Shown: positions 3,101 to 62,000 of the stretch, in pieces
Layout: the number at the start of each line of letters is the position of its first letter
Position numbering within the stretch: position 1 is the stretch's first letter
Assembly (NCBI GenBank): GCA_907165135.1
Contig: OU015568.1
Coordinates: 682,001 to 746,000, forward strand
Length of the DNA stretch: 64,000 nucleotides
Reading direction: 5' to 3'
Origin: Oikopleura dioica
Lineage: Eukaryota > Animalia > Chordata
Translations under genes and position numbers: made by a program
Notes under the pieces: model-generated
Seen by the model: only the letters and a program-made list of their open reading frames with translations
What the model was told of the DNA's origin: nothing
Databases searched by the model: none

Positions 3101-6100
3101 TATTTTTTTAGCACAAAACAAGAAAAGGAAGTGCATTTTCGGAAGGCCAATAGAGTTGCTGTATATGGCCCACCGGCCAATCAAAACGAAGATCCAGAAA
3201 ATCACTTTTTATTCTTGGTTTTGCCCATTTTTTCTATATTTTTTAAAAGAAATATTGAAAAAGTACAATTTTTAATGAGAAAAATAATGATTTTGACTGT
3301 CAGTCAAACTCAAAACTGGTAAATAGGTGCTTACTGCCGCGAAAGCCCGAGTTCCGATGCAACATTAAATGATATTAAATGATGATAAACGTTTTGCCCT
3401 TTATCTGTTCCATTGAATATGGCTAATTATTGCTTTGAAGAGGAAGGGATGATCCTCTTGGCGCGAGTCGACATCCGCCGCTGAAAACGTGTTGTCAAAG
3501 CACGGAAATATTGATTTGATGAAATTTATGACACACGATAATAAACACAGTCAAAAACGTAACGTGCGAACAACGGGGCAATCAAAAACCGCAGCAGTTT
3601 TTGATTGATAAGATTTTGGGTTGGATTTCGAGGTTTTTGTCGAAACGACTTTTTTCTGCAAATTTGTTTTTTCCGGAATTAAAGAAATGGAGGAAACTCA
3701 AAAAGTCGCCATTTTAACGGATTCTCGACGCTTCTCAGCTGCTGATTGGCCAGTTTGCCGAATACAGAACTCTGATTGGTCGGTTAGCTAAATTAAGCCT
3801 TCTGATTGGCCGCTTAGCCGAATCAAGACTTCTGATTGGCCTGTTTGCCAAATAAAAAATTCTGATTGGCCGCTTAGCCGAGTTCAGACTTCTGATTGGC
3901 AAGTCAGCCACCTTCTCACCTTCCACCAATTCAGACCATTCCTTGTGTGGTCAATGCGAATCGGTCTTTCCTGGTCAATATTCAGAGACTCAGTGCACGA
4001 CGATTCGATTCATCGGAGAAATTGATGAGCCTGATGACATATGCGAATACGAACGAGTTAATCTCTACAAAGACATTATTTGGAGCGGAAACGGACCACA
4101 TGTTGATCCTGCTGGAACTTATACTCCTCCTCTCCTTGCCAGCGACTGGTTTCGATACAACGCGTCTCAAGATCTTCTTATGAGTCCTTCAACAAACATC
4201 GATGTCGAACTTCAAGTCACTGGAGATTACGATGTTTCTGACGTTGAAAACATGTTTGACGGGGACGACTCAACTTGGTTTTCTTTTGAAGAGCCTTGTA
4301 CAGAAGACTACCGACCATACGAACTAACGTTTCGATTCATCGACGGAACTGTCGGGGATGGAAACTGGTATGAAGATTTCGGAAGAGTCATCTTCGAAAA
4401 AATTGTTATCAAATTCAATTACGAGATCGTCTATCTTCCGAATTTCGACTCTGAACACCCGATGAATCAGCATGTCGATTTCAAGGGCTTTTCTCACAAC
4501 TCTGTCAAAGCGTATTATAACAGTATCGACTCGTGGACGAATGTATACGAAGATGTACTGATTTCAGAGCTTCTTCCGACAGATGATTTCTTCACTTTCG
4601 AGTTCAGACCCAAAGACTCAGCGATAGTGACGAATCAAATCAAACTGGTCTTTGGAAACACGGCGATAAAAGTTTCGGAAATCTCTCTTTATTGGAAAGA
4701 ATGCGCAATGATCCCCTTCCTCGCCGGTAATTACAAAGTCGGAAGCGAGATCATACCCGGTATCGACAAGGAAATTTGTGCTCTCGATGCGAAACCCACG
4801 AGTTTGTCAAATTTCGGATACGAGCGAGTTCTATCCGGAGAAATTATTCTTCCAGGGCCTTATGATTTTGCCACAGATGATCATCCAAATATGCAGTTTA
4901 ATTGGGCAGCGATCAAGAAACTCAGTGGACAAATTCTCTCAATTTCTGATGCTCAAGCCGCTTGTTCAATCGACGGAAAGCAGCTCATCTACCCTTGGAT
5001 GGAATCACAAAATCAATGGTGGTCCGATCGAATTAACGAAGTCATTGACACCGGCTCAGTTTCTGGTATCTACGCAATCGTTGGACTCGAAACGATTTAC
5101 AAAACAACGACAAATGGCATTTTCTTTCCGCCAGGTCTTCTCAAGCCGTTGAAACCGGGAAATGCAAACAACGGATTCGTTAATTTCTGGGGTTCGAAAT
5201 CGAACACGGCTGCTCAAGCCGCGTTTCAGGAGCTCTCGAATGGAAATGCTTTTTACATCGACCCAGCTACTGGAGACTGGGCTTTGATGGATCTTCAAAA
5301 TGATGCTGCGTCGTATAGTGATTGGGATACAGTCATGTGCGTGTACATTTCGGATGTGATTACCACATGTAAAAATCTTGATGACTGTGTCGCGACAACA
5401 CCTGGCAATTCAGAGTGCAATTCTGATTGGTTGAAACAAAGACATCGAAAAATTTGTCGGGATTTTTATTCCTGATACCTCCTCCAATTTGTTGCAAAAA
5501 ATAAGGGAGTAAGAATGATAAAACAGCAAAATAATCATCTCAAAAACAGAGTTTTCATAAGTCTTCGATAATATTCCCCAAGAAATGCCTCTCTAAGTAC
5601 TTTTTCTCGCTAAATTTGCACTCGATCTCTAAACAATCGAAAAGTGGATGCCCTTAAGTTCTTGCTAAAACATCCATTCTTTCTTTCTATTTTTTCAGCA
5701 CTTGTTATAGAAAAGTGGATCAGCCGGAAATTGAAAGGCTCCTTGAGAAGTTATGTAAGAAGCTCAATTTTCAAGTGTTTGTACATAACGACGATTAGCG
5801 AGTTTCGGCAAAAACACGATTTCATCGCTCGATTATTTCCACCAACTCATCAATCGTTGTTTTACGATTTCTTAGAACAGTGCTAATGCTCTGTATTTTG
5901 CTCCAAACAGAGTTTGATGGTGGCCCCAGTTGGTAAAATTGAAATAACAAATTGAATTAGAATCTGATTGATTATTCTAAATTCAATTCTTGTTAATTAC
6001 ACAATCTGCTGTTGACCTCTAAAATAGAAAGTACGTTAGTGGAATTCCAGCTATAGGAAAAGGGAAGAACGACCTTATCAGTTTTGTCAGTTGTCCAAGA

Positions 6101-47052: not shown

Positions 47053-50000
47053 TTAAAATTCAAATTGAAAACCATGCCTGGGGGTAGAGTCGGATGGAAG
47101 CGGCCCGTACAACGCGATGTACTTGTTCAGCTCAGCTTTGTATCCTTCGGCCTCTTTTTCGTATTTCTTCGACTTTTCCAGGGCTATCGCAAGCTCGCTC
47201 TCGAGGAGCGCGATCTGCTTCATTTTGTAGGGCATCAGGCTCGCCTTAAGAATTATTAGACTTATGCTGCATAATCATAAGTTATGCATCAAAAACGGTT
47301 AACTTACCGGAATAGAATCACAGGCACTAGCTGATTTGATGGAGATGTTAGACAACGTTATCTCCGACGGCGCCTGGGAAGATCCTGCCAACGATTGGCA
47401 AGAGCCTATTGTGCTTCCTAAAAATCATATTTGAAAGAGTCCCTATTTCAAGAATTCCTACCAGAAGTTGATCTCGCATCAAGTGAAAACCGCGGGGAAG
47501 CGTCTTGCACAGGTTCCTCACTCACTGGCGGCACTTCTTCTTTCTCTTCGTTCACTTGGTCGGTCTGCTGTCGATCTACTCGAGACTGAGCCAACTTTCT
47601 TGCCTCAAAGTGGCCTCGTCTTCGTCGGTGCCAGATGCGAGAAGTTTGCTGAGTGACAGGAGCAACTGGTTCAGGAGCTTGATCTTCGATGGGAGCTTCT
47701 TTCACTGTACTTTCTTCTGCAGCAGCTTCTTCAACTACAGCCTCTTCTTGGTCGACTTCACTCACAGGAGCGTCCTCGACGGGAGCATCTCTCTCTTCAT
47801 CATCATTATCTGGCTCGCCTCTGTTCATTTCAGAAGCCATTAGCTGCGAAGATTCTTGCATTTCAGAGGAACCAGCTGTAGAATTGAGTAATTTGTCGAC
47901 TTCCTGATCGCAAGCCGCTTCTTCCTCTGCATCGAATCGATAGCTTGCTCGGACATCATGGACAGGAGCTGCAGCTGCAGCAGGAGCATCAGGTGAAGAG
48001 CTGTTCACAACGGGATCTTGTGTAGCTTGTTCTGGATCGCTGGCGGCTTGTTCGTTCTCTATAAAGTTATATTTTAAACTAAATAAAGCAGTTAACTTTT
48101 AACCTTTCTTTTCGCACTCAGAAACAGCTGCATCAATGACTTCTCGAATGATGTTTTCGCAAAGTTCTCTCGCGAGTTCATTGAGCTCCCGGTCTTCTTT
48201 CTCCTTTTCTTCTTTGACGGCATTCTCGACAATCTTCTCGACATTTTTCTCATCCTCGTTTGCTAAATATACCAGGGTGTCAAATCGCGGGGGATCGAGA
48301 AGGGATCGCGCGCCACCGCCCACGCTCGATCCCAAGTCTGAAGGGATCGCTCGCGCGCTTTTTGAACGGAAAGGGATCGCGGTGAAAATAGCAGAGCAAA
48401 CGCGCGGGCTAGCGCCAGGCTTCATGCGTGGAATTTTCTCCGATCAAGCTCGCGCCGCTTTTCAAAAACTCAGAACTCTTCGTTATTGTCTCAAATTTTA
48501 TGAATTTTTCAGATCTAGTGTAGTTTTTCTCCTCTTTTTCTGATTAAAATTAAACTCATGTTCAAATTAAGTTTAATAAGTTTGTCTGATTATATTATTT
48601 AAAAAAAGAAAGAAATTACATCATTGTCTGTCGACAAAAGGGACAGCGGAAATGAGGAGGAAGGCTTCTTTTGTGACACGCCAAGCACATTGGTGGACAC
48701 TTTTCGCATTGAGCAGCAGCAAATACTTTTTGACAGTCATCTCGACCAATGGGACTAAATAATATGTTAAAATGTGAATATTGATACTCTTCCCCTTAAA
48801 TTTACCACCTAGGGTCGGACCCCTTACTTAGGTTTCCTTAGTTACTAAGGGTAAGGGTTTTGAAATTGATGAATCTGATGATCTCTGAAAACTCAGAAAG
48901 GAACTATGGAAAGGATTTTTTTCCGCCGAAACCCGAAAAAGGGTAAGTAAAGCATCCTTACCTTACTAAGGAAAGGACCCTTAGAAAGCAAAAAATTAAG
49001 GAAGGAAGTCCGACCCTAGCTTACCACTCCATTGGATCAGCGGGAATAAGAAGAACGGGAGGATCAATTTGGAGAGGATCATCTCCATATATTTGTAAGA
49101 CAAATATATTCAATAAACGAAGTCGAAAATGATTTCGAGATGCCGCGGCACGCTTTCGAGTCGTGAAGACGTGTTTTTTAAGCATCTTTTTATCATTTTT
49201 TGCTTTTTAGAGAGTTTTGAATTTGATAAACCTACCGATATAAGAAACATTGGCAGGAAGCGTTGATATGCGATTATTCACCAAATGGTTGATCAAAAAC
49301 AGCAACGGCTCTTTTCACGCGTTTCATTGTGAAAAGTAACTTCTCTTTGAATATTTTTTTTATTATGAAACTCTTGCTTTAGACTTTAAGATTGAATTAA
49401 CTTCAATCAAGCGAGACTTAGATCTATTCATATTATCCACGAATGTTGCTCGAATCTTCGATCTACCCGGGTCGTTCTCATCAATTTCAAGAGATCTTTT
49501 ATTTGTTTGATAATTTCTGTGCATGGAATAACGAGAGTGCTAGGGTTTCGCAAAAAAGCGAATTGGCACTGCGAATTTAGACCCCTGTTCAAACATTTTC
49601 CTGAGAAAAGTTATTTTTTCTGATGAAATAACGCACTTGGTTACATAATTGACTCGATCAGATGGTCGTATTTCCGCATGGTAATGAGAAAAGTGCCAGT
49701 CTAATGTTTGTGGCTTCACAGATTTCAAACAAATCGTGCACGCCATGGGGAACTTCCAAGCCTTTCTTGTCATACTTCTAAACTGATTTTTTTCGTTTTT
49801 TTCCAAACGTAAGAATAATAATTCTAGAGAATTTTCAAAAATAACATATTCTTGGTTCTGAATGCTTAACGGCTCAAAGACTCTCAAAAAATGAAGCCTC
49901 AAAATCGTTTTTGATACGTAGATTTTTGATTGGCTGATAGACAGTTTCGAGCGTTTTGATTGGCTGATAGACATTTCGAGAGTTTTGATTGGCTAATAGA

Positions 50001-53000
50001 CATTTTCGAGCGTTTCGATTGGCTAAGGGGCATTTTCAAGCGTTTTGATTGGCTGATTGACATTTTCGAGCGTTTTGATTGGCTGATAGACATTTTCGAG
50101 CGTTTTGATTGGCTAATAGACATTTTTGAGCGTTTTGATTGGCTAATAGACATTTTCGAGCGTTTTGATTGGCTAAGGGGCATTTTCGAGCGTTTTGATT
50201 GGCTGATAGACATTTTCGAGCGTTTTGATTGGTTAAGAGCCATTTTAGATCGGTTTGATTGGCTAAGGGCCATTTAAGGGCGTTTTAATCGACTTAAAGC
50301 CTGATTTATCCGATTTTGGTCAATTTTTGCGCGACTAAGGTTAATTTTTCTTGAAAATGGTTAATATTTGCATGACCTCGGTCAATTAATGCTTAGAATG
50401 GGTTAATTATTGCATGATCAAGGTTAATTTTCTCATGAATTCGGTTTATATTTACATGACCTCGGTCAATTTATACTTAAAAAAGGGATATTTTAGCATG
50501 ATCAAGGTTAATTTTTTCATGAATTTGGTTAATTTTTGCATGCAAAAGGTTTATAAATGCATGATTTCGACGGGAAATTTTCAGCAAAAAACATTTATTC
50601 AAATAGATTCTGTACATTTGGATAAGAAGACACTTGTAGAATGAGTTCAACAGTACTGGTGTTCAAGCAGTTTCGTTTTGAAGACATGATATCGTTCGCT
50701 TTCGAGAAGAGACGTTCGATGCTGCCGCTTGAGCCAGGAGTTGAGCGTATGAGTTGTGCGATTCTGGCGAATGTCGGGTAAGTTCCAGCGTGATGCGTGA
50801 AATACATCAAGCTCCGTTCGGCCGTACTGGCGGAGGTCTTGAACATGGGATCGAGCTGGTTCAACCATTGCTTGTATCTTTTGACGCTTTCTTTGCGCTC
50901 CATCTTGCTCTCCTTCTTGAACCATGCAGAGAACTCATCAGTTGATGATTTTTCGCATTCATCCTCGTCGCTCGAATATTGCTCCATTTCTTCCTCGAAA
51001 GTCGACTTTGCTTGAGAAGATGGAGGTGTCGGCGGAGCGCGCTCCTGTGAGTTTGGAGGAGTCAACGTCTTTGGCTGTGATGAAGGAGCTGCTGATGGTG
51101 TCTTCTGTTGCTGGTTTTCAACAGGAACCTAAAATAAAGTTAATTATTAATGCTGTTTTATGTAAAAATTGATCGCGTCTGAGTAAAAATGGACCTTTCC
51201 TATGAAAAATTCATCCGATTTCGGGTAAAAATTTACCGCTTAATGCAAAAATTAATCGAAACTTGGTAGAAATTAACCTTTTTTGGGAAAAAATTAACCA
51301 GCTCCGGGTAAAAATTAACCTTTACTTACAAGAATGAAGATTTCCTCAATTGGTTTGGTTTGCTCAGCTAGGTCAAAGAAGGTCTTGCGCATTGTCTCCT
51401 TCCAGACAGGAACTGCAGTATCGAAGCAATTGATGAGGGTGTCGTATGTAGACTTGGTGATGAACGAATCCTTCTCAAAGGCGTCGTCAAGTCGGTTACG
51501 GATCAAGGTGAATTCGAAGTGACGGCTAAAGAAGTCAAGGGAGAGCCCGATCAAAGCAGCTGGATTTGCTCTCGATTTGATGTAGGATCCTCTCGATGGC
51601 TTCCGTCCAGTGATGTTAGCACCGAAAATGTAGTCTGCTACGGTCAGAATCAGCTCCTGGTGGATTTCCTTGAAGTCAGCCGGATCAATTTGAAGCAAGA
51701 ATTTCAGCAAGTCGAACAGTTTTGTTAGAGTGTCACCAACCGAGAAGTGATCCGAATCGGTGGACGCCAGAGCAGGCTCGAAGACTTGGGAGACTGAGTG
51801 GAGGTAATGAACGAGCTTCCAGTCGATTTCGTGTAAGATCGACTTTGAGTCAGTCAGGTACTTCTGGTGGCGACGAAGAAGAGGTTCGTTTGCCATGAGC
51901 TGCTTGTAGGTCGTGATGAAAGATCTGAAAGATAAAGTTAATAATTACATATTTTCGATTAGTTTAAACATGACCTCGGTTAATTTTATCGTGAAACGGT
52001 AAATTTTTACATGAAAAGGGTCAATTTTTACATTGAAAGGGTTAATTTTTACATAAAGGGGTTAATTTTTACATTAAAACGGTCAATATTTACATGAAAA
52101 GGGTCAAATTTTTCACGAAAAGGGTCAATTTTTACATGGAATGGGTCAATTTTTACATGGAAAAGGTCAATTGTTACAAGCAATGATGAAGAACAAACCT
52201 GAATCTGATGTAATAGATCCTGTCGATCGTAACGAATTTGTCGTAATTCGGGTAGAATTGCCTGATGTGCTTGAGCTCGTCTTCAGTTGGAGTGTAGCTT
52301 TTCACCAGATCATTGAAGGATTTCTCGGAGCAGTCGTCTCGTTCAGCTCGATGATTGCATGCTGAGACCGCTTTCTCGATCTCGACACAGCTATCGCCGA
52401 CGATTGCATCGCTCTGGACAAGGGTAATATATCTAAAGTGAAGACGTTATTTGATGAAATAAGAATGATGTATTTACCTTTTTAACTGATTCGAAATCGT
52501 GTGGCTTGCACAGACAACGGCGAAGTAGTCGGAGAAGGCCTGAGCCATTGGCGCATCTCCAACAACTGGAAGTCGTTTTGCGTGAAAAAACTCGAGGATA
52601 TTCCAATCCGAGAGGACGTTTTCTAGTTGTCGACGTACATTCGCATCAGTTGCTTTGAAGATGACCCCGTAATGAAGAAGAAAAATCGTGTCTTTCGCAG
52701 GTTCGAATCGTAAAAGCCGATGAAGACCCCAAGGTATTTGCTACTTCTTTCTTTCGTTAGCCGAGGGCAGTCGAATCCATCAAGGACCAAGCAACATCTG
52801 TTTTCCTGGATGAGACCAGGCAGCTTGGACTTGACGATACCATTCGAAACGGTACTTTTGCGCCTTGAAAATTTATATATCCAAATATAATGGTTAATTT
52901 TTACCTGAGAATCTTCACAATTTTGTGACTGCTTATTCCATTCGCTATTGCCTGATGAGCCCTTGCGCAAAATTTCTTCATTGTTTCGGTTTCAAAAGCA

Positions 53001-56000
53001 CAAATTGAAAGACCATCGTTCGCAACAACTTCTGCGGCGATTTCCTCAAGCTCTTCGGCGTCGGTTGTAATTGAACGATGGTGTTCTTGGATGTGCCGTT
53101 TCACGTAGTAGTCAGTCGCATGGCTCGCTTTCGCCAAATTGCCTCGAATGCCAAAGAAAACCTATAAAAGAGTTAATTTTACTTGACTGGTCGTTTTTTA
53201 ACATTAAAACGGCTAATTTTTTTCTCACGACCGATCAATTTTTACATGAAAGGGTCAATTTTTACATGAAAAAGGTCAAATTTTACATGAAAAAGGTCAA
53301 ATTTTACATAAAAAGGGTCAATTTTTCCATGAAATGCGTCAAATTTTACATGAAAAAGGTCAATTTTTACATGGAAAAGGGTCAATTTTTACATGAAAAA
53401 GGTTAATTTTAACTCAAATCTGGTCAATTTTTTCTTACCTTATGTTTGTATTCAGCATTAGTGCAGAAGGGGCTCCGGCAAATGAGATATGGCGTCGGCG
53501 TCTGGTCTGACTTCGTGATTTTCTCTAGTTTGAAATCTGCTGTGTAATTGTGATGGATCTCTGAAGTGCAAACGAGCTTCTCATCTTCTTCTAGAATCTC
53601 TACAATTTTCTTGAACTCATCTTTGGTTTTTTTCTTTTTCTCAAATGGAGTAGATGGCGGAGAAAGCAAAGGACCTTCATCAAATGGCCGTTTTTGACTC
53701 ATATTTACGAAAAAATTTCATTTTTGACGGACTTTATATTGACAGTACATCTGGAAAGATGGCGTCCTTCTGCAGATGGACTGATTTCCGATCATTAGTA
53801 AAGTATCTGAGTAATACCCCGCTGCGAGAATCAGATATGAAGGGTTTATTTCCAAGCAGCTGAAGATAAAATCACAGAAAAGACGTGAAAAGACTCGAGG
53901 TACCAAACAGCTGTGATGAAGTCAGAATCATGGTGAATTTTTACATGAATAATATTATTTTTTTAATTGAATAAACCAAAGTCGGATTAATTATGGCATA
54001 ATTTTTCTTAGTATTTTCGTTAAAAAAGTAAGGATTATTATATGTTGATCTTTTTTTGCATTAAAAATTGATTGTTATTGAATTTTTACAAGGTCGCTCG
54101 TTTTCGGAATTTTAAGATCCCTTGCGCGAAGGGATATCCCACGCGCGAAGGGATCGGCGCGATCCCTTTGTTTATGTGAGCGCTCCCTTCTCGTTGCCTC
54201 TCGCTGCGAGGCGATCCCTTACACCGTGGGATCGAAACGGCGCTGTGGCGCGCGATCCCTTCAAAATCCCCCGCGATTTGACACCCTGGATCTATTCATA
54301 TTATCCACGAATGTTGCTCGAATCTTCGATCTACCCGGGTCGTTCTCATCAATTTCAAGAGATCTTTTATTTGTTTGATAATTTCTGTGCATGGAATAAC
54401 GAGAGTGCTAGGGTTTCGCAAAAAGCGAATTGGCACTGCGAATTTAGACCCCTGTTCAAACATTTTCCTGAGAAAAGTTATTTTTCTGATGAAATAACGC
54501 ACTTGGTTACATAATTGACTCGATCAGATGGTCGTATTTCCGCATGGTAATGAGAAAAGTGCCAGTCTAATGTTTGTGGCTTCACAGATTTCAAACAAAT
54601 CGTGCACGCCATGGGGAACTTCCAAGCCTTTCTTGTCATACTTCTAAACTGATTTTTTCGTTTTCCAAACGTAAGAATAATAATTCTAGAGAATTTTCAA
54701 AAATAACATATTCTTGGTTCTGAATGCTTAACGGCTCAAAGACTCTCAAAAATGAAGCCTCAAAATCGTTTTTGATACGTAGATTTTGATTGGCTGATAG
54801 ACAGTTTCGAGCGTTTTGATTGGCTGATAGACATTTCGAGAGTTTTGATTGGCTAATAGACATTTTCGAGCGTTTCGATTGGCTAAGGGGCATTTTCAAG
54901 CGTTTTGATTGGCTGATTGACATTTTCGAGCGTTTTGATTGGCTGATAGACATTTTCGAGCGTTTTGATTGGCTAATAGACATTTTTGAGCGTTTTGATT
55001 GGCTAATAGACATTTTCGAGCGTTTTGATTGGCTAAGGGGCATTTTCGAGCGTTTTGATTGGCTGATAGACATTTTCGAGCGTTTTGATTGGTTAAGAGC
55101 CATTTTAGATCGGTTTGATTGGCTAAGGGCCATTTAAGGGCGTTTTAATCGACTTAAAGCCTGATTTATCCGATTTTGGTCAATTTTTGCGCGACTAAGG
55201 TTAATTTTTCTTGAAAATGGTTAATATTTGCATGACCTCGGTCAATTAATGCTTAGAATGGGTTAATTATTGCATGATCAAGGTTAATTTTCTCATGAAT
55301 TCGGTTTATATTTACATGACCTCGGTCAATTTATACTTAAAAAAGGGATATTTTAGCATGATCAAGGTTAATTTTTTCATGAATTTGGTTAATTTTTGCA
55401 TGCAAAAGGTTTATAAATGCATGATTTCGACGGGAAATTTTCAGCAAAAAACATTTATTCAAATAGATTCTGTACATTTGGATAAGAAGACACTTGTAGA
55501 ATGAGTTCAACAGTACTGGTGTTCAAGCAGTTTCGTTTTGAAGACATGATATCGTTCGCTTTCGAGAAGAGACGTTCGATGCTGCCGCTTGAGCCAGGAG
55601 TTGAGCGTATGAGTTGTGCGATTCTGGCGAATGTCGGGTAAGTTCCAGCGTGATGCGTGAAATACATCAAGCTCCGTTCGGCCGTACTGGCGGAGGTCTT
55701 GAACATGGGATCGAGCTGGTTCAACCATTGCTTGTATCTTTTGACGCTTTCTTTGCGCTCCATCTTGCTCTCCTTCTTGAACCATGCAGAGAACTCATCA
55801 GTTGATGATTTTTCGCATTCATCCTCGTCGCTCGAATATTGCTCCATTTCTTCCTCGAAAGTCGACTTTGCTTGAGAAGATGGAGGTGTCGGCGGAGCGC
55901 GCTCCTGTGAGTTTGGAGGAGTCAACGTCTTTGGCTGTGATGAAGGAGCTGCTGATGGTGTCTTCTGTTGCTGGTTTTCAACAGGAACCTAAAATAAAGT

Positions 56001-59000
56001 TAATTATTAATGCTGTTTTATGTAAAAATTGATCGCGTCTGAGTAAAAATGGACCTTTCCTATGAAAAATTCATCCGATTTCGGGTAAAAATTTACCGCT
56101 TAATGCAAAAATTAATCGAAACTTGGTAGAAATTAACCTTTTTTGGGAAAAAATTAACCAGCTCCGGGTAAAAATTAACCTTTACTTACAAGAATGAAGA
56201 TTTCCTCAATTGGTTTGGTTTGCTCAGCTAGGTCAAAGAAGGTCTTGCGCATTGTCTCCTTCCAGACAGGAACTGCAGTATCGAAGCAATTGATGAGGGT
56301 GTCGTATGTAGACTTGGTGATGAACGAATCCTTCTCAAAGGCGTCGTCAAGTCGGTTACGGATCAAGGTGAATTCGAAGTGACGGCTAAAGAAGTCAAGG
56401 GAGAGCCCGATCAAAGCAGCTGGATTTGCTCTCGATTTGATGTAGGATCCTCTCGATGGCTTCCGTCCAGTGATGTTAGCACCGAAAATGTAGTCTGCTA
56501 CGGTCAGAATCAGCTCCTGGTGGATTTCCTTGAAGTCAGCCGGATCAATTTGAAGCAAGAATTTCAGCAAGTCGAACAGTTTTGTTAGAGTGTCACCAAC
56601 CGAGAAGTGATCCGAATCGGTGGACGCCAGAGCAGGCTCGAAGACTTGGGAGACTGAGTGGAGGTAATGAACGAGCTTCCAGTCGATTTCGTGTAAGATC
56701 GACTTTGAGTCAGTCAGGTACTTCTGGTGGCGACGAAGAAGAGGTTCGTTTGCCATGAGCTGCTTGTAGGTCGTGATGAAAGATCTGAAAGATAAAGTTA
56801 ATAATTACATATTTTCGATTAGTTTAAACATGACCTCGGTTAATTTTATCGTGAAACGGTAAATTTTTACATGAAAAGGGTCAATTTTTACATTGAAAGG
56901 GTTAATTTTTACATAAAGGGGTTAATTTTTACATTAAAACGGTCAATATTTACATGAAAAGGGTCAAATTTTTCACGAAAAGGGTCAATTTTTACATGGA
57001 ATGGGTCAATTTTTACATGGAAAAGGTCAATTGTTACAAGCAATGATGAAGAACAAACCTGAATCTGATGTAATAGATCCTGTCGATCGTAACGAATTTG
57101 TCGTAATTCGGGTAGAATTGCCTGATGTGCTTGAGCTCGTCTTCAGTTGGAGTGTAGCTTTTCACCAGATCATTGAAGGATTTCTCGGAGCAGTCGTCTC
57201 GTTCAGCTCGATGATTGCATGCTGAGACCGCTTTCTCGATCTCGACACAGCTATCGCCGACGATTGCATCGCTCTGGACAAGGGTAATATATCTAAAGTG
57301 AAGACGTTATTTGATGAAATAAGAATGATGTATTTACCTTTTTAACTGATTCGAAATCGTGTGGCTTGCACAGACAACGGCGAAGTAGTCGGAGAAGGCC
57401 TGAGCCATTGGCGCATCTCCAACAACTGGAAGTCGTTTTGCGTGAAAAAACTCGAGGATATTCCAATCCGAGAGGACGTTTTCTAGTTGTCGACGTACAT
57501 TCGCATCAGTTGCTTTGAAGATGACCCCGTAATGAAGAAGAAAAAATCGTGTCTTTCGCAGGTTCGAATCGTAAAAGCCGATGAAGACCCCAAGGTATTT
57601 GCTACTTCTTTCTTTCGTTAGCCGAGGGCAGTCGAATCCATCAAGGACCAAGCAACATCTGTTTTCCTGGATGAGACCAGGCAGCTTGGACTTGACGATA
57701 CCATTCGAAACGGTACTTTTGCGCCTTGAAAATTTATATATCCAAATATAATGGTTAATTTTTACCTGAGAATCTTCACAATTTTGTGACTGCTTATTCC
57801 ATTCGCTATTGCCTTATGAGCCCTTGCGCAAAATTTCTTCATTGTTTCGGTTTCGAAAGCACCAATTGAAAGACCATCGTTCGCAACAGCTTCCGCGGCG
57901 ATTTCCTCAAGCTCTTCGGCGTCGGTTGTAATTGAACGATGGTGTTCTTGGATGTGCCGTTTCACGTAGTAGTCAGTCGCATGGCTCGCTTTCGCCAAAT
58001 TGCCTCGAATGCCAAAGAAAACCTATAAAAGAGTTAATCTTACTTGACTGGTCGTTTTTAACATTAAAACGGCTAATTTTTTCTCACGACCGATCAATTT
58101 TTACATGAAAGGGTCAATTTTTACATGAAAAAGGTCAAATTTTACATGAAAAAGGTCAAATTTTACATAAAAAGGGTCAATTTTTCCATGAAATGCGTCA
58201 AATTTTACATGAAAAAGGTCAATTTTTACATGGAAAAGGGTCAATTTTTACATGAAAAAGGTTAATTTTAACTCAAATCTGGTCAATTTTTTCTTACCTT
58301 ATGTTTGTATTCAGCATTAGTGCAGAAGGGGCTCCGGCAAATGAGATATGGCGTCGGCGTCTGGTCTGACTTCGTGATTTTCTCTAGTTTGAAATCTGCT
58401 GTGTAATTGTGATGGATCTCTGAAGTGCAAACGAGCTTCTCATCTTCTTCTAGAATCTCTACAATTTTCTTGAACTCATCTTTGGTTTTTTTCTTTTTCT
58501 CAAATGGAGTAGATGGCGGAGAAAGCAAAGGACCTTCATCAAATGGCCGTTTTTGACTCATATTTACGAAAAAATTTCATTTTTGACGGACTTTATATTG
58601 ACAGTACATCTGGAAAGATGGCGTCCTTCTGCAGATGGACTGATTTCCGATCATTAGTAAAGTATCTGAGTAATACCCCGCTGCGAGAATCAGATATGAA
58701 GGGTTTATTTCCAAGCAGCTGAAGATAAAATCACAGAAAAGACGTGAAAAGACTCGAGGTACCAAACAGCTGTGATGAAGTCAGAATCATGGTGAATTTT
58801 TACATGAATAATATTATTTTTTTAATTGAATAACCCAAAGTCGGATTAATTATGGCATAATTTTTCTTAGTATTTTCGTTAAAAAAGTAAGGATTATTAT
58901 ATGTTGATCTTTTTTTGCATTAAAAATTGATTGTTATTGAATTTTTACAAGGTCGCTCGTTTTCGGAATTTTAAGATCCCTTGCGCGAAGGGATATCCCA

Positions 59001-62000
59001 CGCGCGAAGGGATCGGCGCGATCCCTTTGTTTATGTGAGCGCTCCCTTCTCGTTGCCTCTCGCTGCGAGGCGATCCCTTACACCGTGGGATCGAAACGGC
59101 GCTGTGGCGCGCGATCCCTTCAAAATCCCCCGCGATTTGACACCCTGAAATATACTAGTTTAAAAATCAGATTTTCTGTCTTGAAACTACCTGTATCTCC
59201 CTTCTCATCTGGCCGAGGAAAGCTGGGAGCAAGAGAGACAGAAGAAGTCTTTCGACCTCGGGCAGCAGCTTCCTTCTCAATTTTCGCTTTCAGAGATGCT
59301 TTCGCTCGTTCCTCGACTTGTTTCCATTCGTTTTGCGTCATATTTACTTTGCCATCAGCGATCATGATGTCCACGAGCTCCTGACACTGCCGATTATGGA
59401 AAAGATCTTCCGGCTTCTGAAAATATAATATTAAGATTGAGCTGGCTCTAACCAGGGCAAATTACCTTTCCGTCATTGTTGAGAATGTTTCTCAGCTCTG
59501 GATTCTTCAGGAAAAGGGCAGCAACAAATTTGGAGCGGCCAGCACTGCAGGCATGATGTGCCGGAGTCCAACCATCGTGATTTTTCTTCTTCAAGCTTTC
59601 ATCGTCGAAGAAGTCTAATGCAAGAACATCGCCGGCTTTGCTGAAGAAATGGACGGGCAGGTTTCCCGACGATGTTGCAGGGTGACGGTTGATGTCGTAG
59701 CCATTGTCGATCAGGAATCTTATTCGCTCGAGTTCAATGTTCGAGAATTTATCGAACTTTCTTGGCTGATGTATGCTACCATAGCCTTCCCGGCGCGATT
59801 TTGTGCGGAAGAAATAGGCAGTGAGCCAGTTTTCCTCGTGCTCTCCTTGTTCGTTCTTTCTTCTGACGATCGGAGTGTTCAGCAAATCGCCTTCCACTTT
59901 CTTCATCGCAAAGACGATTTTGTCGAAGAACTCGTCGAAATCGCCTTCTCGCATCATAAGCGCATTGTTCATAATGAAGTAGTTCTTTCCATTAGTGCCG
60001 ATTGTCGCAGAAAGATCAACTTCGCCGGTCTCCAGTAAGTTCTCTGCAAACTTTCGCTTTTCTGAAACGAACTTCGGATCGTCCCCTGGGTTGACAAAAT
60101 CGCGCGCAAACTTTCCAAACACATCCGTCATCAAACGCTTCTCAATTGGGTACTCGCCGCTTTCAAATTTGACCAGAAACGCAGGAAGGAAGTCCACTAG
60201 TCGAGGGCATTGCAATACAAAGCTGATGTTGTTCAAGGATGTATTCCAATCTGCGGTGACGATCGAAGAGATTATCCGTCGTGCATTTTCTCGCTGTTCT
60301 GGGTCGGTTAGTCCCATGTATCCGTTGAGAAGATTCTCCGTCTTGCAGATTTCTTTGCGCTGGATTTGAACGTTGATCTCAGAACTTAAAATAAAGAATG
60401 AGTAAATAGACAACTGACACTTGAATTTGACTTCGTATTCGCTACGAGTCGTCACTTACCGATGAGCATCAAGAATTTCCACCAACGCATCGATCGTTTC
60501 GTTGGCCTCTTTGATCAAACTCTCGAGCTTCTCCCAGATTTTCCAAATATCCTCCTTCCTCAATCGGAACTCCTTCTTCAACAGAAACTGCACTGTCTCA
60601 AGAAACTCTTTCGCCTTTCTATTATTCTTGTCCCTGGTCGTGTATTTGAAGAAGACATAGCCGAGGAGGTCGTCGCGAATCGCTCCTTTTTCCTTCGCAC
60701 CGTTGTCAAGAAGGATCTTGCCGATGGAGACATCGAGGCCAGCAAAGGCTCTTGTCGCTGGTAACTCGTAACTATTCCTCCCTCTGAGAGTAAGGTCAAG
60801 AGCAGGCTGCATGGAGAGAATCAGCGCACAGTTGAATGCGTTGTAGTGGATCGCGCATTCCAGAAGGGTGAAGGGTTTTTTCTCAGAAGAATTTCTTTTC
60901 TTTACTGCTGGAAGAATGTAGTTGCAATCAAGCTCGCCTGAATTGAGACGATCGAGGAAGGCTTTGGAGTTGTCTTGCTTGATGTCCAGGAAGATTCCTG
61001 TATCTTCGTTCTCTTTCTTTGTCGGGTTTGAATATGGGCTTAGGACGGTTAAGAAATCGGTGGACGGAACCCAAGAACGATCTCCTCTGTTTCTACTGCA
61101 AGAACGAGCTCTAGAATTTCGTCTACGCGTTGGAGTTAACATTATAATCTCTGCAAAGAAGCAAGTGAAATTTCGTCAACAATATCAACGAATTTTCGAG
61201 ATGAAATCATCTAGAATGATTTAAGAAAGAAGAAAATTTTTCTTCTAGAGATAAATATTAATAGATTCTTTACCAAATCAATTTTCAAACCCTTTCCTTC
61301 TCTAAAGTCTGCTGATTCTGTTCAGAATTAGCGCGATTCGGATTCTCTTTCAGCGGCGAGCTGTGAGCACGTGACATCGTCCTGTCGTTAAAATTTCTCT
61401 CTGGACCAGAAAAAGGGCCCGGCGGGAAGTACTTGTTCAGTCGGATAGCGTGTTGCGTGTTCTGGCAGTCCTCTTTGTAGCGAAGCTGCCGTTTCTCTTC
61501 TTCACTTTTCGGCTCTGGCTCGGGCGGCGGCGGCTGCCAATCAACTGGTGCAGATCCGTCTCGTGGATAACGCTTGGCAAGGAAATCTCGAAGAATCGGA
61601 TTTCCCGCTAAACAAAAGAGTTCTTTTCTCTCTAGATTTCAATTTCGAAAAAGGCCACCAAAAAGCTGAGAATGCTTCTAGAAATCACTTTTCGAAAGAG
61701 ATTCTAGAAGGAATTTTTTAAAGCAATTTTGGTCTTTTTAGACAATTTTTTCGTCCTTTTTAGTCAATTTTGAAGTATAAAAAATCAAATTTTAGTCATT
61801 TTTAGCTTAGTTTTGGCCATTTTTGATACATTTGTTTCTCACCGAAATCTGCTAGAATTCGCAGCTCCTTGATCTTGAACCCTTTCGGCGGATTCCCAGC
61901 GTAAGCCTCCACAGCACTTGGGATATCAGCTGGCTTCAGAACTCCTTCCAACCAATTCACGACTTCTTCTTTTGTCGGCTTGAAATTTTCGTAACCGCCC

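What the first reader, a model, noticed from the sequence alone, without database searches (positions are those of the whole stretch)
48616..50280. Two-gene hAT transposon: spliced C2H2-ZnF + RING-like gene behind a 12-fold, 30-bp-phased CCAAT array
Seen: between the transposase stop (50595) and the left TIR lies a co-oriented intron-containing gene that the ORF track shows only in part. It has an N-terminal C-x2-C-x11-H-x4-H finger and a C-terminal C-x6-C-x8-C-x2-C-x3-C-x2-C-x10-C-x2-C domain ending CPFCR. About 150 bp upstream of its ATG (preceded by a TTTAG acceptor) are 12 sense-oriented CCAAT boxes at 30-bp spacing. Established: typical hAT elements encode only a transposase; RING domains are usually E3 ligases; multiple CCAAT boxes ~30 bp apart are an NF-Y promoter architecture. 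Inference: the element carries a separately promoted accessory E3-like gene, possibly an anti-silencing factor or transposase regulator. The middle exons need frameshift correction, so intactness is uncertain.
Basis: partly seen in the sequence, partly recalled or inferred. Interest (0 to 1): 0.82.

Follow-up and report, generated by a model that had tools for sequence, protein, structure and literature searches.

The report
hAT transposon with zinc-finger accessory gene
A cut-and-paste (hAT) transposon of the tunicate Oikopleura dioica carries, behind its transposase, a second conserved gene for a small zinc-finger protein preceded by a row of 12 evenly spaced CCAAT boxes; this is unusual for hAT elements, but its ubiquitin-ligase role and its expression remain unproven.

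Summary
Window 48273-54288 is a 6.0-kb hAT element: 23-nt TIR starting CAGGG, 8-bp target-site duplications, and a hAT dimerisation domain. Downstream of the transposase stop, on the same strand, lies a spliced gene for about 199 aa. It encodes a C2H2-type finger, a basic region and an 8-Cys module ending CPFCR. Twelve sense CCAAT boxes in 30-bp phase lie 156 bp upstream of its ATG.

The genome is Oikopleura dioica OKI2018_I69. The gene occurs in three deep lineages here (A: this window and C5; B: C4; C: the Y-specific scaffold), 34-40% identical in protein. All ten zinc ligands are kept, dN is well below dS, and lineages A and C share an intron position. All three have intact 196-204-aa ORFs.

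New here: A and B elements have 91-94% identical transposase DNA, but their accessory genes are saturated at silent sites. The gene therefore behaves as an exchanged module.

Membership in the RING family is not shown, and E3 activity, NF-Y use and anti-silencing were not tested. No RNA reads were found. The scan noted this gene before on other DNA (s1-371387, s1-534406).

The parts
48265..48272 (.). Left 8-bp target-site duplication AAATATAC. Its partner is at 59148-59155, so it pairs with the outer right end.
48273..48295 (+). Left terminal inverted repeat, 23 nt, starting CAGGGTG. It is followed by subterminal AGGGATCGCG-like repeats up to about 48400.
   Evidence: The same 23 nt is found at all ends of the C1, C5 and C4 copies.
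48616..48754 (-). Accessory gene exon 4: Cys 2-8 of the 8-Cys module, ending CPFCRQTMM, with stop TAA at 48618-48616. An ATTAAA lies at 48577-48572.
48755..49024 (-). Intron 3 (GT-AG, 270 nt, splits the first Cys codon TG|T). It holds a MITE (about 48809-49020) that has many copies in the genome.
   Evidence: Lineage C has a 40-nt intron at the same position and phase. Lineage B has none.
49025..49202 (-). Accessory gene exon 3: Lys/Arg-rich region (KNDKKMLKK..RKRAAA..) and a Pro-rich linker.
49203..49424 (-). Proposed intron 2 (GA-AG, 222 nt). It is an insertion relative to lineages B and C. It holds 52-nt (100%) and 42-nt (93%) matches to a locus on scaffold C2. Its 5' end lies 3-4 nt from the a|b duplication breakpoint (49420|49421).
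   Evidence: PMC7072748 for GA-AG introns in O. dioica. Not verified by RNA.
49425..49516 (-). Accessory gene exon 2 (..LEIDENDPGRSKIRATFVDNMN).
   Evidence: protein-level match to lineage B
49517..49582 (-). Proposed intron 1 (GT-AG, 66 nt). The C5 copy differs here by a +2 and a -5 indel.
49583..49773 (-). Accessory gene exon 1: ATG at 49773, with the single C2H2-type finger C-x2-C-x11-H-x4-H.
49924..50286 (-). 30-bp tandem array with 12 sense-oriented AGCCAATCA boxes, 156 bp upstream of the ATG.
   Evidence: There are 15 boxes in the C5 copy and 10 in lineage B.
50315..50551 (-). 84/42/21-bp tandem repeats between the transposase stop and the CCAAT array. The same 21-bp unit fills three transposase introns.
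50595..53702 (-). hAT transposase gene, multi-exon. The last exon carries the hAT dimerisation domain. This copy is frameshifted at the T-run 52681-52685.
   Evidence: (PF05699, E 2.1e-9)
54266..54288 (-). Inner right terminal inverted repeat (R1), joined directly to the second unit.
54289..59147 (-). Second unit, a copy of 49421-54288 at 99.6% identity, ending in R2. It holds only exons 1-2 of the accessory gene, with a 1-nt deletion in an A-run. Its transposase exon 3 is open.

Best explanation
Window 48273-54288 is a hAT DNA transposon of Oikopleura dioica that carries two co-oriented genes.

Shown:
- The second gene is a genuine protein-coding gene held inside the element. It has 4 exons and encodes about 199 aa.
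- The protein has one C2H2-type finger, a Lys/Arg-rich region and a C-terminal 8-Cys two-zinc module.
- The gene has been kept under purifying selection through three deeply diverged lineages.
- It behaves as an exchangeable module. Elements whose transposase, arrays and ends are about 90% identical carry accessory genes that are saturated at silent sites. The breakpoints lie at the gene-proximal end of the CCAAT array and about 110 bp from the L end.

Inferred:
- The gene is its own transcription unit. The transposase stop overlaps an AATAAA, 821 nt separate the two genes, and 10-15 phased AGCCAATCA boxes sit 150 bp upstream. I take these boxes to recruit the host CCAAT factor NF-Y.
- The product is a nuclear adaptor. 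The finger plus basic region would bind nucleic acid. The cross-brace-like zinc module would bind a host protein, possibly an E2, which would make the protein an E3-like ligase.
- The protein differs 60% between elements with near-identical transposase and identical TIRs. I therefore think its target is a host factor rather than the transposase or the element ends.

My odds: real, selected, element-borne second gene 0.85; own CCAAT-driven promoter 0.45; ubiquitin/SUMO-ligase activity 0.3. The overall confidence of 0.55 is for the statement as a whole, including the inferred host-directed role.
For: hAT identity: 8-bp duplications AAATATAC (C1) and GCTAACAC (C5), a TIR starting CAGGG, and Dimer_Tnp_hAT at E 2.1e-9.

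Linkage: the genome has 7 transposase copies (C1 x4, C5, C4 x2). Five of them have the complete accessory gene in the same place and orientation. The other two are the truncated second units and have only its 5' part.

Selection:
- A versus B over 140 aligned codons gives dN 0.55 with saturated dS. Codon-position identity is 53/64/41%.
- All 8 Cys and the C2H2 ligands are kept in A, B and C.
- The intron splitting the first Cys codon is shared by A and C.
- Intact ORFs of 199, 204 and 196 aa can be modelled.
- C1 versus C5: 4 substitutions in 600 nt of CDS (2 silent, A33V, F189Y), against 11 substitutions plus 3 indels in 558 nt of introns. Fisher p = 0.067.

Mosaic: transposase exon 5, A versus B, has dN 0.027 and dS 0.20. 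Nucleotide similarity stops at 49919 and resumes at 48382.

Finger: the profile search hits multi-C2H2 proteins at E 2e-6 to 7e-4.

Zinc module: the best PDB matches are the C-terminal halves of the RCHY1 and RNF4 RINGs (E 0.2-0.8). All named language-model neighbours are RING families.

CCAAT: AGCCAATCA occurs in 12 of 12 units. In lineage B the four degenerate proximal units keep GCCAATC while the rest of the unit drifts. An NF-YA gene is present at 45 bits against a cut-off of 27.
Against: No RNA support. Three bulk and one single-cell RNA runs labelled with this species gave 2 partial reads over 48300-54290, and none was listed as holding the stretch. The runs may come from another cryptic lineage, so this is no test of silence.

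The lineage A model needs a non-canonical GA-AG intron that is an insertion relative to B and C. Many other splice chains are formally possible.

RING is not established. There is no Pfam hit, the fold model is unusable (pLDDT 46.6), the C1-x6-C2 spacing is atypical, and lineage B has CIFCM instead of CPFCR. The 8 Cys could equally form two sequential C4 sites.

No homologue was found outside this genome: 1.84 billion representatives gave only this genome's lineage C model, and two word searches were blank.

Lineage C sits on the Y-specific scaffold without a recognisable hAT transposase, TIR or CCAAT array, so the gene is not always element-linked.

The array may be one more of the element's many internal tandem repeats.
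Confidence: 0.55

Rival explanations
1. Transposition cofactor. The zinc-finger protein binds the element's own subterminal or internal repeats and recruits or imports the transposase, as the Myb-like ORF2 protein does for PIF/Harbinger and TnpA for En/Spm (my knowledge of those systems).
For: The architecture is a DNA-binding-type finger, a basic NLS-like stretch and a protein-interaction zinc module. The gene sits in every full-length copy. The element is full of short repeated motifs that could be binding sites.
Against: A and B elements share identical 23-nt TIRs, about 90% identical subterminal DNA and 94% identical transposase exon 5. Their accessory proteins are only 40% identical. A cofactor should co-evolve with its partners. 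hAT transposases studied so far work alone (my knowledge).
Confidence: 0.2
2. Passenger gene. A host gene, of which lineage C on the Y-specific scaffold may be the survivor, was captured by a hAT. It is carried along without serving the element, and the lineage A copy is already broken by the 222-nt insertion.
For: Lineage C has the cleanest model, with three GT-AG introns of 40-44 nt. It lies outside any recognisable hAT and is partly in the published annotation. Lineage A has an insertion with in-frame stops that carries fragments matching another locus. No transcripts were seen.
Against: Two diverged lineages, A and B, keep open frames and all ligands inside elements despite saturated silent sites. 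This is not expected of a useless passenger in a transposon. Introns differ about 3x more than exons between the C1 and C5 copies. The 222-nt segment has GA..AG ends whose removal restores exact colinearity with B.
Confidence: 0.13
3. No separate promoter. The CCAAT array is just an internal minisatellite. The second gene is expressed, if at all, from the transposase's transcript as a downstream cistron resolved by spliced-leader trans-splicing at the AG just before its ATG.
For: O. dioica uses operons and a spliced leader; 56 matches to the leader's 3' half are in this genome. All three lineages have an AG 1-4 nt before the ATG. The element carries several other tandem arrays with no evident role. 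Lineage C has no CCAAT array.
Against: The intergenic distance is 821 nt, and an AATAAA overlaps the transposase stop. Oikopleura operons have short spacers (my knowledge). The box plus flanks AGCCAATCA is the best-kept part of the unit, also in drifted units of lineage B. Box number stays at 10-15 in all copies.
Confidence: 0.3

Closest known systems
Canonical hAT elements (Ac, hobo, Hermes, Tol2)
   Same: 8-bp target duplication, short TIR starting CAGGG, subterminal short repeats, and a transposase with the C-terminal hAT dimerisation domain.
   Different: Those elements encode only a transposase (my knowledge). My paper searches found no described two-gene hAT. This one has a second conserved gene and a CCAAT array between the two genes.
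Two-gene DNA transposons: PIF/Harbinger (transposase plus Myb-like protein), MuDR (mudrA/mudrB), En/Spm (TnpA/TnpD)
   Same: A cut-and-paste element that keeps a second, non-catalytic gene with a nucleic-acid-binding type domain.
   Different: It belongs to a different superfamily and has different domains (a C2H2 finger plus an 8-Cys module). The accessory gene does not co-evolve with the transposase and ends, unlike a dedicated cofactor.
RING-type E3 ligases (c-Cbl, RNF4, RCHY1; C4C4 RING of CNOT4) and viral RING proteins such as herpesvirus ICP0
   Same: Eight zinc ligands. The second half, C-x2-C-x10-C-P-x-C-R, resembles RING halves (CPFCR also ends the c-Cbl RING, from memory). Language-model neighbours are RING families.
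   Different: C1-x6-C2 instead of x2, and C2-C3 spacing of 7-8 instead of 9 or more. No significant HMM match, no confident fold, and Pro and Arg missing in lineage B.
Multi-CCAAT NF-Y promoters (cell-cycle genes such as cyclin B2, cdc25C and topoisomerase II alpha, with boxes about 32 bp apart; my knowledge)
   Same: Boxes fit RRCCAATCA and are phased about 3 helical turns apart, in sense orientation upstream of a gene.
   Different: There are 10-15 boxes instead of 2-5, made by a tandem repeat, ending 156 bp from the ATG. No start site or binding data exist.
VANC anti-silencing proteins of Arabidopsis VANDAL (Mutator-like) transposons (my knowledge)
   Same: A transposon-borne extra gene that diverges fast between related elements while the transposase stays similar.
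   Different: No sequence relation. VANC specificity tracks element DNA motifs. No silencing assay exists here.

Membership tests
hAT superfamily transposon | 8-bp target-site duplication | tested here: met
   AAATATAC flanks the C1 composite and GCTAACAC flanks the C5 copy.
hAT superfamily transposon | Short TIRs starting 5'-YARNG | tested here: met
   The 23-nt TIR CAGGGTGTCAAATCGCGGGGGAT is at every end.
hAT superfamily transposon | Transposase with the C-terminal hAT dimerisation domain | tested here: met
   PF05699 at E 2.1e-9, 37.4 bits against a cut-off of 21.4, in the last exon.
hAT superfamily transposon | Intact DDE/RNase-H catalytic core | tested here: inconclusive
   Not scored against a profile. 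Exon 3 is frameshifted at the T-run 52681-52685 in this unit and in C5, and open in the second unit and in C4.
C2H2 zinc finger | Ligand pattern C-x2-4-C-x12-H-x3-5-H | tested here: inconclusive
   C-x2-C-x11-H-x4-H in A and B, C-x4-C-x11-H-x4-H in C. The central spacer is one residue short.
C2H2 zinc finger | Significant sequence similarity to known C2H2 fingers | tested here: met
   The profile hits multi-finger C2H2 proteins at E 2e-6 to 7e-4 in 1.84 billion proteins, aligned on profile positions 5-34. Pfam models stay below their cut-offs.
C2H2 zinc finger | beta-beta-alpha fold | tested here: inconclusive
   The AlphaFold model has pLDDT 67.9. The His-bearing helix is present, but the CxxC part is modelled as a helix.
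RING finger (E3 ligase domain) | C-x2-C-x9-39-C-x1-3-[HC]-x2-3-C-x2-C-x4-48-C-x2-C spacing | tested here: not met
   C1-x6-C2 and C2-x7/8-C3 fall outside the pattern. The remaining spacings fit.
RING finger (E3 ligase domain) | Significant match to a RING profile or a solved RING | tested here: not met
   No Pfam RING family reaches its cut-off. The best PDB matches have E 0.23-0.8. Atlas scores are 0.89 or lower.
RING finger (E3 ligase domain) | Cross-brace fold | tested here: inconclusive
   The AlphaFold model from 3 sequences has pLDDT 46.6 and was not searched against fold libraries.
RING finger (E3 ligase domain) | E2-contact and linchpin residues (Pro after C7, Arg/Lys after C8) conserved | tested here: inconclusive
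   CPFCR in A and C, CIFCM in B.
RING finger (E3 ligase domain) | Ubiquitin-transfer activity with an E2 | not testable with these tools
   Needs an in vitro assay.
NF-Y-type CCAAT promoter | Boxes matching RRCCAAT[CG][AG] | tested here: met
   AGCCAATCA in 12 of 12 units here, 15 in C5 and 10 in B.
NF-Y-type CCAAT promoter | Host encodes the sequence-specific subunit NF-YA | tested here: met
   PF02045 at 45.3 bits against a cut-off of 27, at C1:10356030.
NF-Y-type CCAAT promoter | Transcription start downstream of the boxes, and NF-Y occupancy | not testable with these tools
   No RNA reads were laid. No ChIP data are available.
Two-gene DNA transposon (accessory gene belongs to the element) | Gene lies inside the TIRs in independent insertions | tested here: met
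   C1, C5 and C4 (two copies).
Two-gene DNA transposon (accessory gene belongs to the element) | Purifying selection on the accessory gene | tested here: met
   dN 0.55 against saturated dS, ligands kept, intact ORFs in 3 lineages.
Two-gene DNA transposon (accessory gene belongs to the element) | Accessory gene is expressed and needed by the element | not testable with these tools
   No reads. Needs RNA from the Okinawa strain and transposition assays.

The most novel reading that the evidence does not exclude
A DNA transposon carries its own exchangeable host-interference cassette. The cassette is a small finger plus RING-like ligase that marks a host silencing or restriction factor for removal, much as herpesvirus ICP0 does. 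It is driven by a 10-15-box NF-Y array that keeps its promoter open. The deep A/B/C diversity on near-identical transposase backbones would then be the trace of an arms race fought by swapping cassettes between elements.
Probability: 0.12. Interest if true: 0.85.

Novelty: new variant of a known kind. Interest (0 to 1): 0.58.

Why it matters
hAT elements are treated as one-gene transposons. A hAT that keeps a second gene under selection, with its own candidate promoter, extends the short list of DNA transposons with accessory proteins (Harbinger, MuDR, En/Spm).

The mosaic pattern is the more unusual point. The transposase is nearly the same in A and B elements while the accessory gene is saturated at silent sites. 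This shows that elements exchange this gene as a module, which is what one expects of a factor aimed at the host rather than at the element. O. dioica has a tiny genome under strong pressure against transposons, so a transposon-borne counter-measure would be of real interest there.

The finding also gives concrete test cases for GA-AG splicing and for intron growth by MITE insertion in this species.

Tried and rejected
1. Nematode origin. The Oikopleura spliced-leader 3' half has 56, and the cluster record names OKI2018_I69.

2. Intron 3 born from the MITE (an 'introner'). Rejected, because lineage C has a 40-nt intron at the same position and phase without a MITE. The MITE landed in an existing intron.

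3. Canonical GT-AG-only model for lineage A. No single-intron solution exists between 'FVDNM' and 'KAKNDKK'. Dozens of multi-intron chains are possible, so none is informative (timed out, 33).

4. RNA evidence. One run search and one read-laying run gave nothing usable. None was listed as holding the stretch.

5. Homologues elsewhere. Word searches with the finger exon and with the Cys-module alignment were blank. The profile search gave only this genome's lineage C model plus generic C2H2 proteins. The look-up of encoding contigs was blank for P0001.

6. Fold of the Cys module. The AlphaFold model has pLDDT 46.6, so no fold search was run on it. The finger-exon model (pLDDT 67.9) was not searched either.

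7. Gene X next to lineage C as a hidden hAT transposase. There were no tblastn, Pfam or BLASTP matches beyond 5-7-residue words.

8. The C2 locus that shares 52 and 42 nt with intron 2. No clear gene is there.

9. Literature. No paper describing a two-gene hAT or an Oikopleura hAT was found.

The joined (spliced) protein was not sent to any search or fold tool. Exons were searched one by one by reference. The joined ORFs were only checked for length, stops and pairwise identity in local scripts.

Full report
WHAT IS THERE

I read 48000-53500 on both strands. The minus strand carries, from right to left:
- a multi-exon transposase gene (ATG 53702, stop 50595-50597);
- 84/42/21-bp tandem repeats (50315-50551);
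- a 30-bp tandem array (49924-50286);
- 150 bp of unique sequence;

TRF gives the array 11.5 copies at 88% matches. A direct count gives 12 ATTGG on the + strand at 49929-50258, spaced 30,29,30x9. Every unit reads AGCCAATCA in gene sense. The finger C-x2-C-x11-H-x4-H and the module C-x6-C-x8-C-x2-C-x3-C-x2-C-x10-C-x2-C ending CPFCR are both present. The first Cys codon of the module is split TG|T by a 270-nt GT-AG intron.

THE ORGANISM

The nematode SL1 is absent. The 3' half of the Oikopleura spliced leader occurs 56 times against 1 for the control. The one database protein that matched is recorded as Oidioi.mRNA.OKI2018_I69.YSR.g17122 of Oikopleura dioica. The assembly figures, 64.3 Mb in 19 scaffolds, match PMC8008620. 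Scaffold C3 (2.9 Mb) is the Y-specific region.

THE ELEMENT

- The termini are a perfect 23-nt inverted repeat starting CAGGGTG.
- The window holds a composite L-a-b-R-b-R. Segment 49421-54288 is repeated at 54289-59147 with 99.6% identity. The 8-bp duplication AAATATAC flanks the whole composite, at 48265-48272 and 59148-59155.
- The same composite occurs 100% identical 96 kb upstream on C1.
- A single, uncomplicated 6.08-kb copy lies on C5 with its own duplication GCTAACAC.
- Two further copies lie on C4 in inverted orientation, with swapped flanking duplications.
- The last transposase exon has the hAT dimerisation domain (PF05699, E 2.1e-9).
- Short deletion derivatives share the ends.

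This is a hAT element by three defining features.

IS THE SECOND GENE REAL AND ELEMENT-BORNE?

A six-frame search of the genome with the two outer exons finds three lineages.
- Lineage A: the C1 copies and the C5 copy, 97-100% identical to each other.
- Lineage B: the two C4 copies, 36-53% identical per exon to A.
- Lineage C: one copy on the Y-specific scaffold, plus a decayed fragment on C4 in which two Cys are replaced by Ser and Trp.

The genome has seven transposase copies. Five of them have the complete accessory gene at the same place and in the same orientation. The other two are the truncated second units of the composites and have only exons 1-2.

Lineage C gives a clean model of four exons with three GT-AG introns of 42, 44 and 40 nt, encoding 196 aa. 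Its last intron splits the first Cys codon exactly as in A. B has no intron there. The intron is therefore older than the MITE that now fills it in A (48809-49020, many genomic copies).

All eight Cys and the four finger ligands are kept in A, B and C. Over 140 aligned codons of A and B, dN is 0.55 and dS is saturated, and identity by codon position is 53/64/41%. Between the C1 and C5 copies, the 600-nt coding model has 4 substitutions (2 silent, A33V, F189Y). The 558 nt of introns have 11 substitutions and 3 indels (Fisher p = 0.067). I conclude that this is a protein-coding gene under purifying selection that travels with the element.

THE 'FRAMESHIFT'

Relative to B and C, lineage A has 222 extra nucleotides, with in-frame stops, between ..FVDNMN and KNDKK... 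With GT-AG only, at least two introns and a mini-exon are needed, and dozens of chains are possible, so none is convincing.

The segment has GA at its start and AG at its end (49424-49203). Removing it restores a 199-aa ORF that aligns with B without a gap at that place. B likewise needs one intron that removes a single stop. A 42-nt GA-AG intron or a 102-111-nt GT-AG intron would do. GA-AG introns are reported in high numbers in O. dioica (PMC7072748).

The 222-nt segment contains 52 nt (100%) and 42 nt (93%) that match a locus on scaffold C2. It starts 3-4 nt from the a|b breakpoint of the composite. I cannot say how it arose. The splice models remain predictions.

A MOSAIC

The A and B elements align at about 91% from the R end through the transposase (54288-50318). 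They align at about 90% through the arrays and 90% over the last 110 bp at the L end. There is no nucleotide similarity at all from 49919 to 48383.

Transposase exon 5 has dN 0.027 and dS 0.20 between A and B. The accessory gene has dN 0.55 and saturated dS. Faster protein evolution cannot explain saturated silent sites. The accessory gene, with its proximal 150 bp and its 3' end, has a much older common ancestor than the backbone. So the module has been exchanged between elements, or the backbone has been homogenised around it. The shared arrays and subterminal region are the obvious substrates for such exchange. This is inference.

WHAT THE PROTEIN IS

A profile of the finger exon was searched against 1.84 billion representative proteins. 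It found only this genome's lineage C model at E 1.3e-22. That model is an annotation that joins exons 1-2 to acetyl-CoA-transporter-like exons 4 kb away. The search also found five multi-finger C2H2 proteins at E 2e-6 to 7e-4, aligned on the finger. The N-terminal motif is therefore a C2H2-type finger, although no Pfam model reaches its cut-off.

For the Cys module:
- no Pfam family reaches its cut-off;
- the best matches among solved structures are the C-terminal halves of the RCHY1 and RNF4 RINGs, at E 0.2-0.8;
- the language-model neighbours with names are all RING families, but score 0.89 or less;
- the AlphaFold model built on three sequences has pLDDT 46.6.

The spacing fits a C4C4 RING except at the first pair (x6) and the first loop (7-8 residues). 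CPFCR is RING-like, but B has CIFCM. Two sequential C4 sites are an equally valid reading. I therefore do not file the module as a RING. 'RING-like' is a lead, not a result.

The joined protein was not sent to any search or fold tool. Exons were searched one at a time by reference.

EXPRESSION AND PROMOTER

The run search listed no run holding the stretch. Three bulk and one single-cell RNA run with the species label gave two partial reads over the whole element. O. dioica is a complex of very divergent cryptic lineages (PMC11067885, title and abstract), and the element may be absent from the animals sequenced. This is no evidence of silence.

Arguments for a separate transcription unit:
- an AATAAA overlaps the transposase stop, and 821 nt separate the genes;
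- box number is kept at 10-15 in all copies;
- GCCAATC is kept in four otherwise drifted units of lineage B;
- the genome has an NF-YA gene.

Arguments against:
- the element is rich in other tandem repeats;
- lineage C has no such array;
- an AG lies 1-4 nt before the ATG in all lineages, which would allow spliced-leader addition to a longer transcript.

MECHANISM I THINK MOST LIKELY

The gene is a nuclear adaptor encoded by the element and transcribed from its own CCAAT-array promoter. The finger and basic region bind nucleic acid. The zinc module binds a host protein, possibly an E2. The protein differs 60% between elements whose transposase and ends are almost the same. I therefore favour a host-directed role over a transposase cofactor. 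Only the existence, conservation and modularity of the gene are shown. The rest is inference.

RELATION TO EARLIER NOTES OF THIS SCAN

Three earlier notes bear on this report.
- s1-371387 described the twin copy 42 kb before this window and rejected the RING-ligase label.
- s1-534406 described a hAT-borne RING gene on another piece.
- s1-534617 noted the L-a-b-R-b-R structure.

My own tests agree with the second-gene reading and with the caution about RING. They add the three lineages, the mosaic divergence, the GA-AG model and the analysis of the array.

VERDICT

This is a real two-gene hAT element, a new variant of a known kind. Its accessory gene has unknown biochemistry, and its candidate NF-Y promoter is untested.

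Noticed in passing
window 48265-59155: Composite L-a-b-R-b-R. The 8-bp duplication AAATATAC pairs the L end with the outer R end, and the inner R end is fused to internal position 49421. This looks like an aberrant (sister-chromatid or self-targeted) hAT transposition.
   Followed up: partly
window 52681-52685 and 57540-57560; also 49619 vs about 54485: The two units of the composite have complementary defects. Unit 1 (and the C5 copy) has T5 in transposase exon 3, which breaks the frame. Unit 2 and both C4 copies have T6 and are open there. Unit 2 has a 1-nt A-run deletion in accessory exon 1 and lacks exons 3-4. These could be Nanopore homopolymer errors.
   Followed up: partly
G000:C1:634557-643050 (L002, L004, L032): The whole composite recurs 100% identical 96 kb upstream on the same chromosome. 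This is either a very recent segmental duplication or an assembly duplication.
   Followed up: no
G000:C4:376493-382430 and 391232-397170 (L065, L033, L066): Two lineage B elements lie in inverted orientation 8.8 kb apart, and their flanking 8-bp duplications are swapped between them. This is the signature of an inversion by recombination between the copies, or of alternative transposition.
   Followed up: partly
window 51978-52178, 53235-53432, 51270-51323, 50315-50551: The same 21-bp unit (GGTCAATTTTTACATGAAAAA-like) forms arrays in three transposase introns and in the spacer after the stop. A related array lies upstream of the lineage C gene (L067:4165-4300, inverted copy at 1122-1212).
   Followed up: no
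window 48809-49020: A palindromic MITE inside intron 3 of the accessory gene has dozens of copies on all large scaffolds at 91-94% identity. The C5 copy lacks 32 bp next to it (48779-48810).
   Followed up: partly
L067 (G000:C3:1543000-1552999, Y-specific scaffold): The lineage C gene is transcribed divergently from an unknown multi-exon gene (L067:4014-1400, minus strand; no Pfam match; distant paralogue on C1:12123627). The pair is bracketed by direct GC-rich repeats (about 880-1100 and 5200-5440). The published model g17122 joins exons 1-2 of the zinc-finger gene to acetyl-CoA-transporter-like exons 4 kb downstream.
   Followed up: partly
window 49236-49287 and 49319-49360; L075 (G000:C2:6764500-6770500): Two pieces of the proposed GA-AG intron match one C2 locus: 52 nt at 100% and 42 nt at 93%, colinear but 1 kb apart there. 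Origin and direction of transfer are unknown.
   Followed up: partly
window 52954-53033 vs 57815-57894: Five of the 20 differences between the two tandem units are substitutions clustered in 80 nt of transposase exon 2.
   Followed up: no
G000:C1:5392861-5394658 (L034): A 1.8-kb deletion derivative keeps both ends and only the last 32 codons of the accessory gene (97% identical).
   Followed up: no
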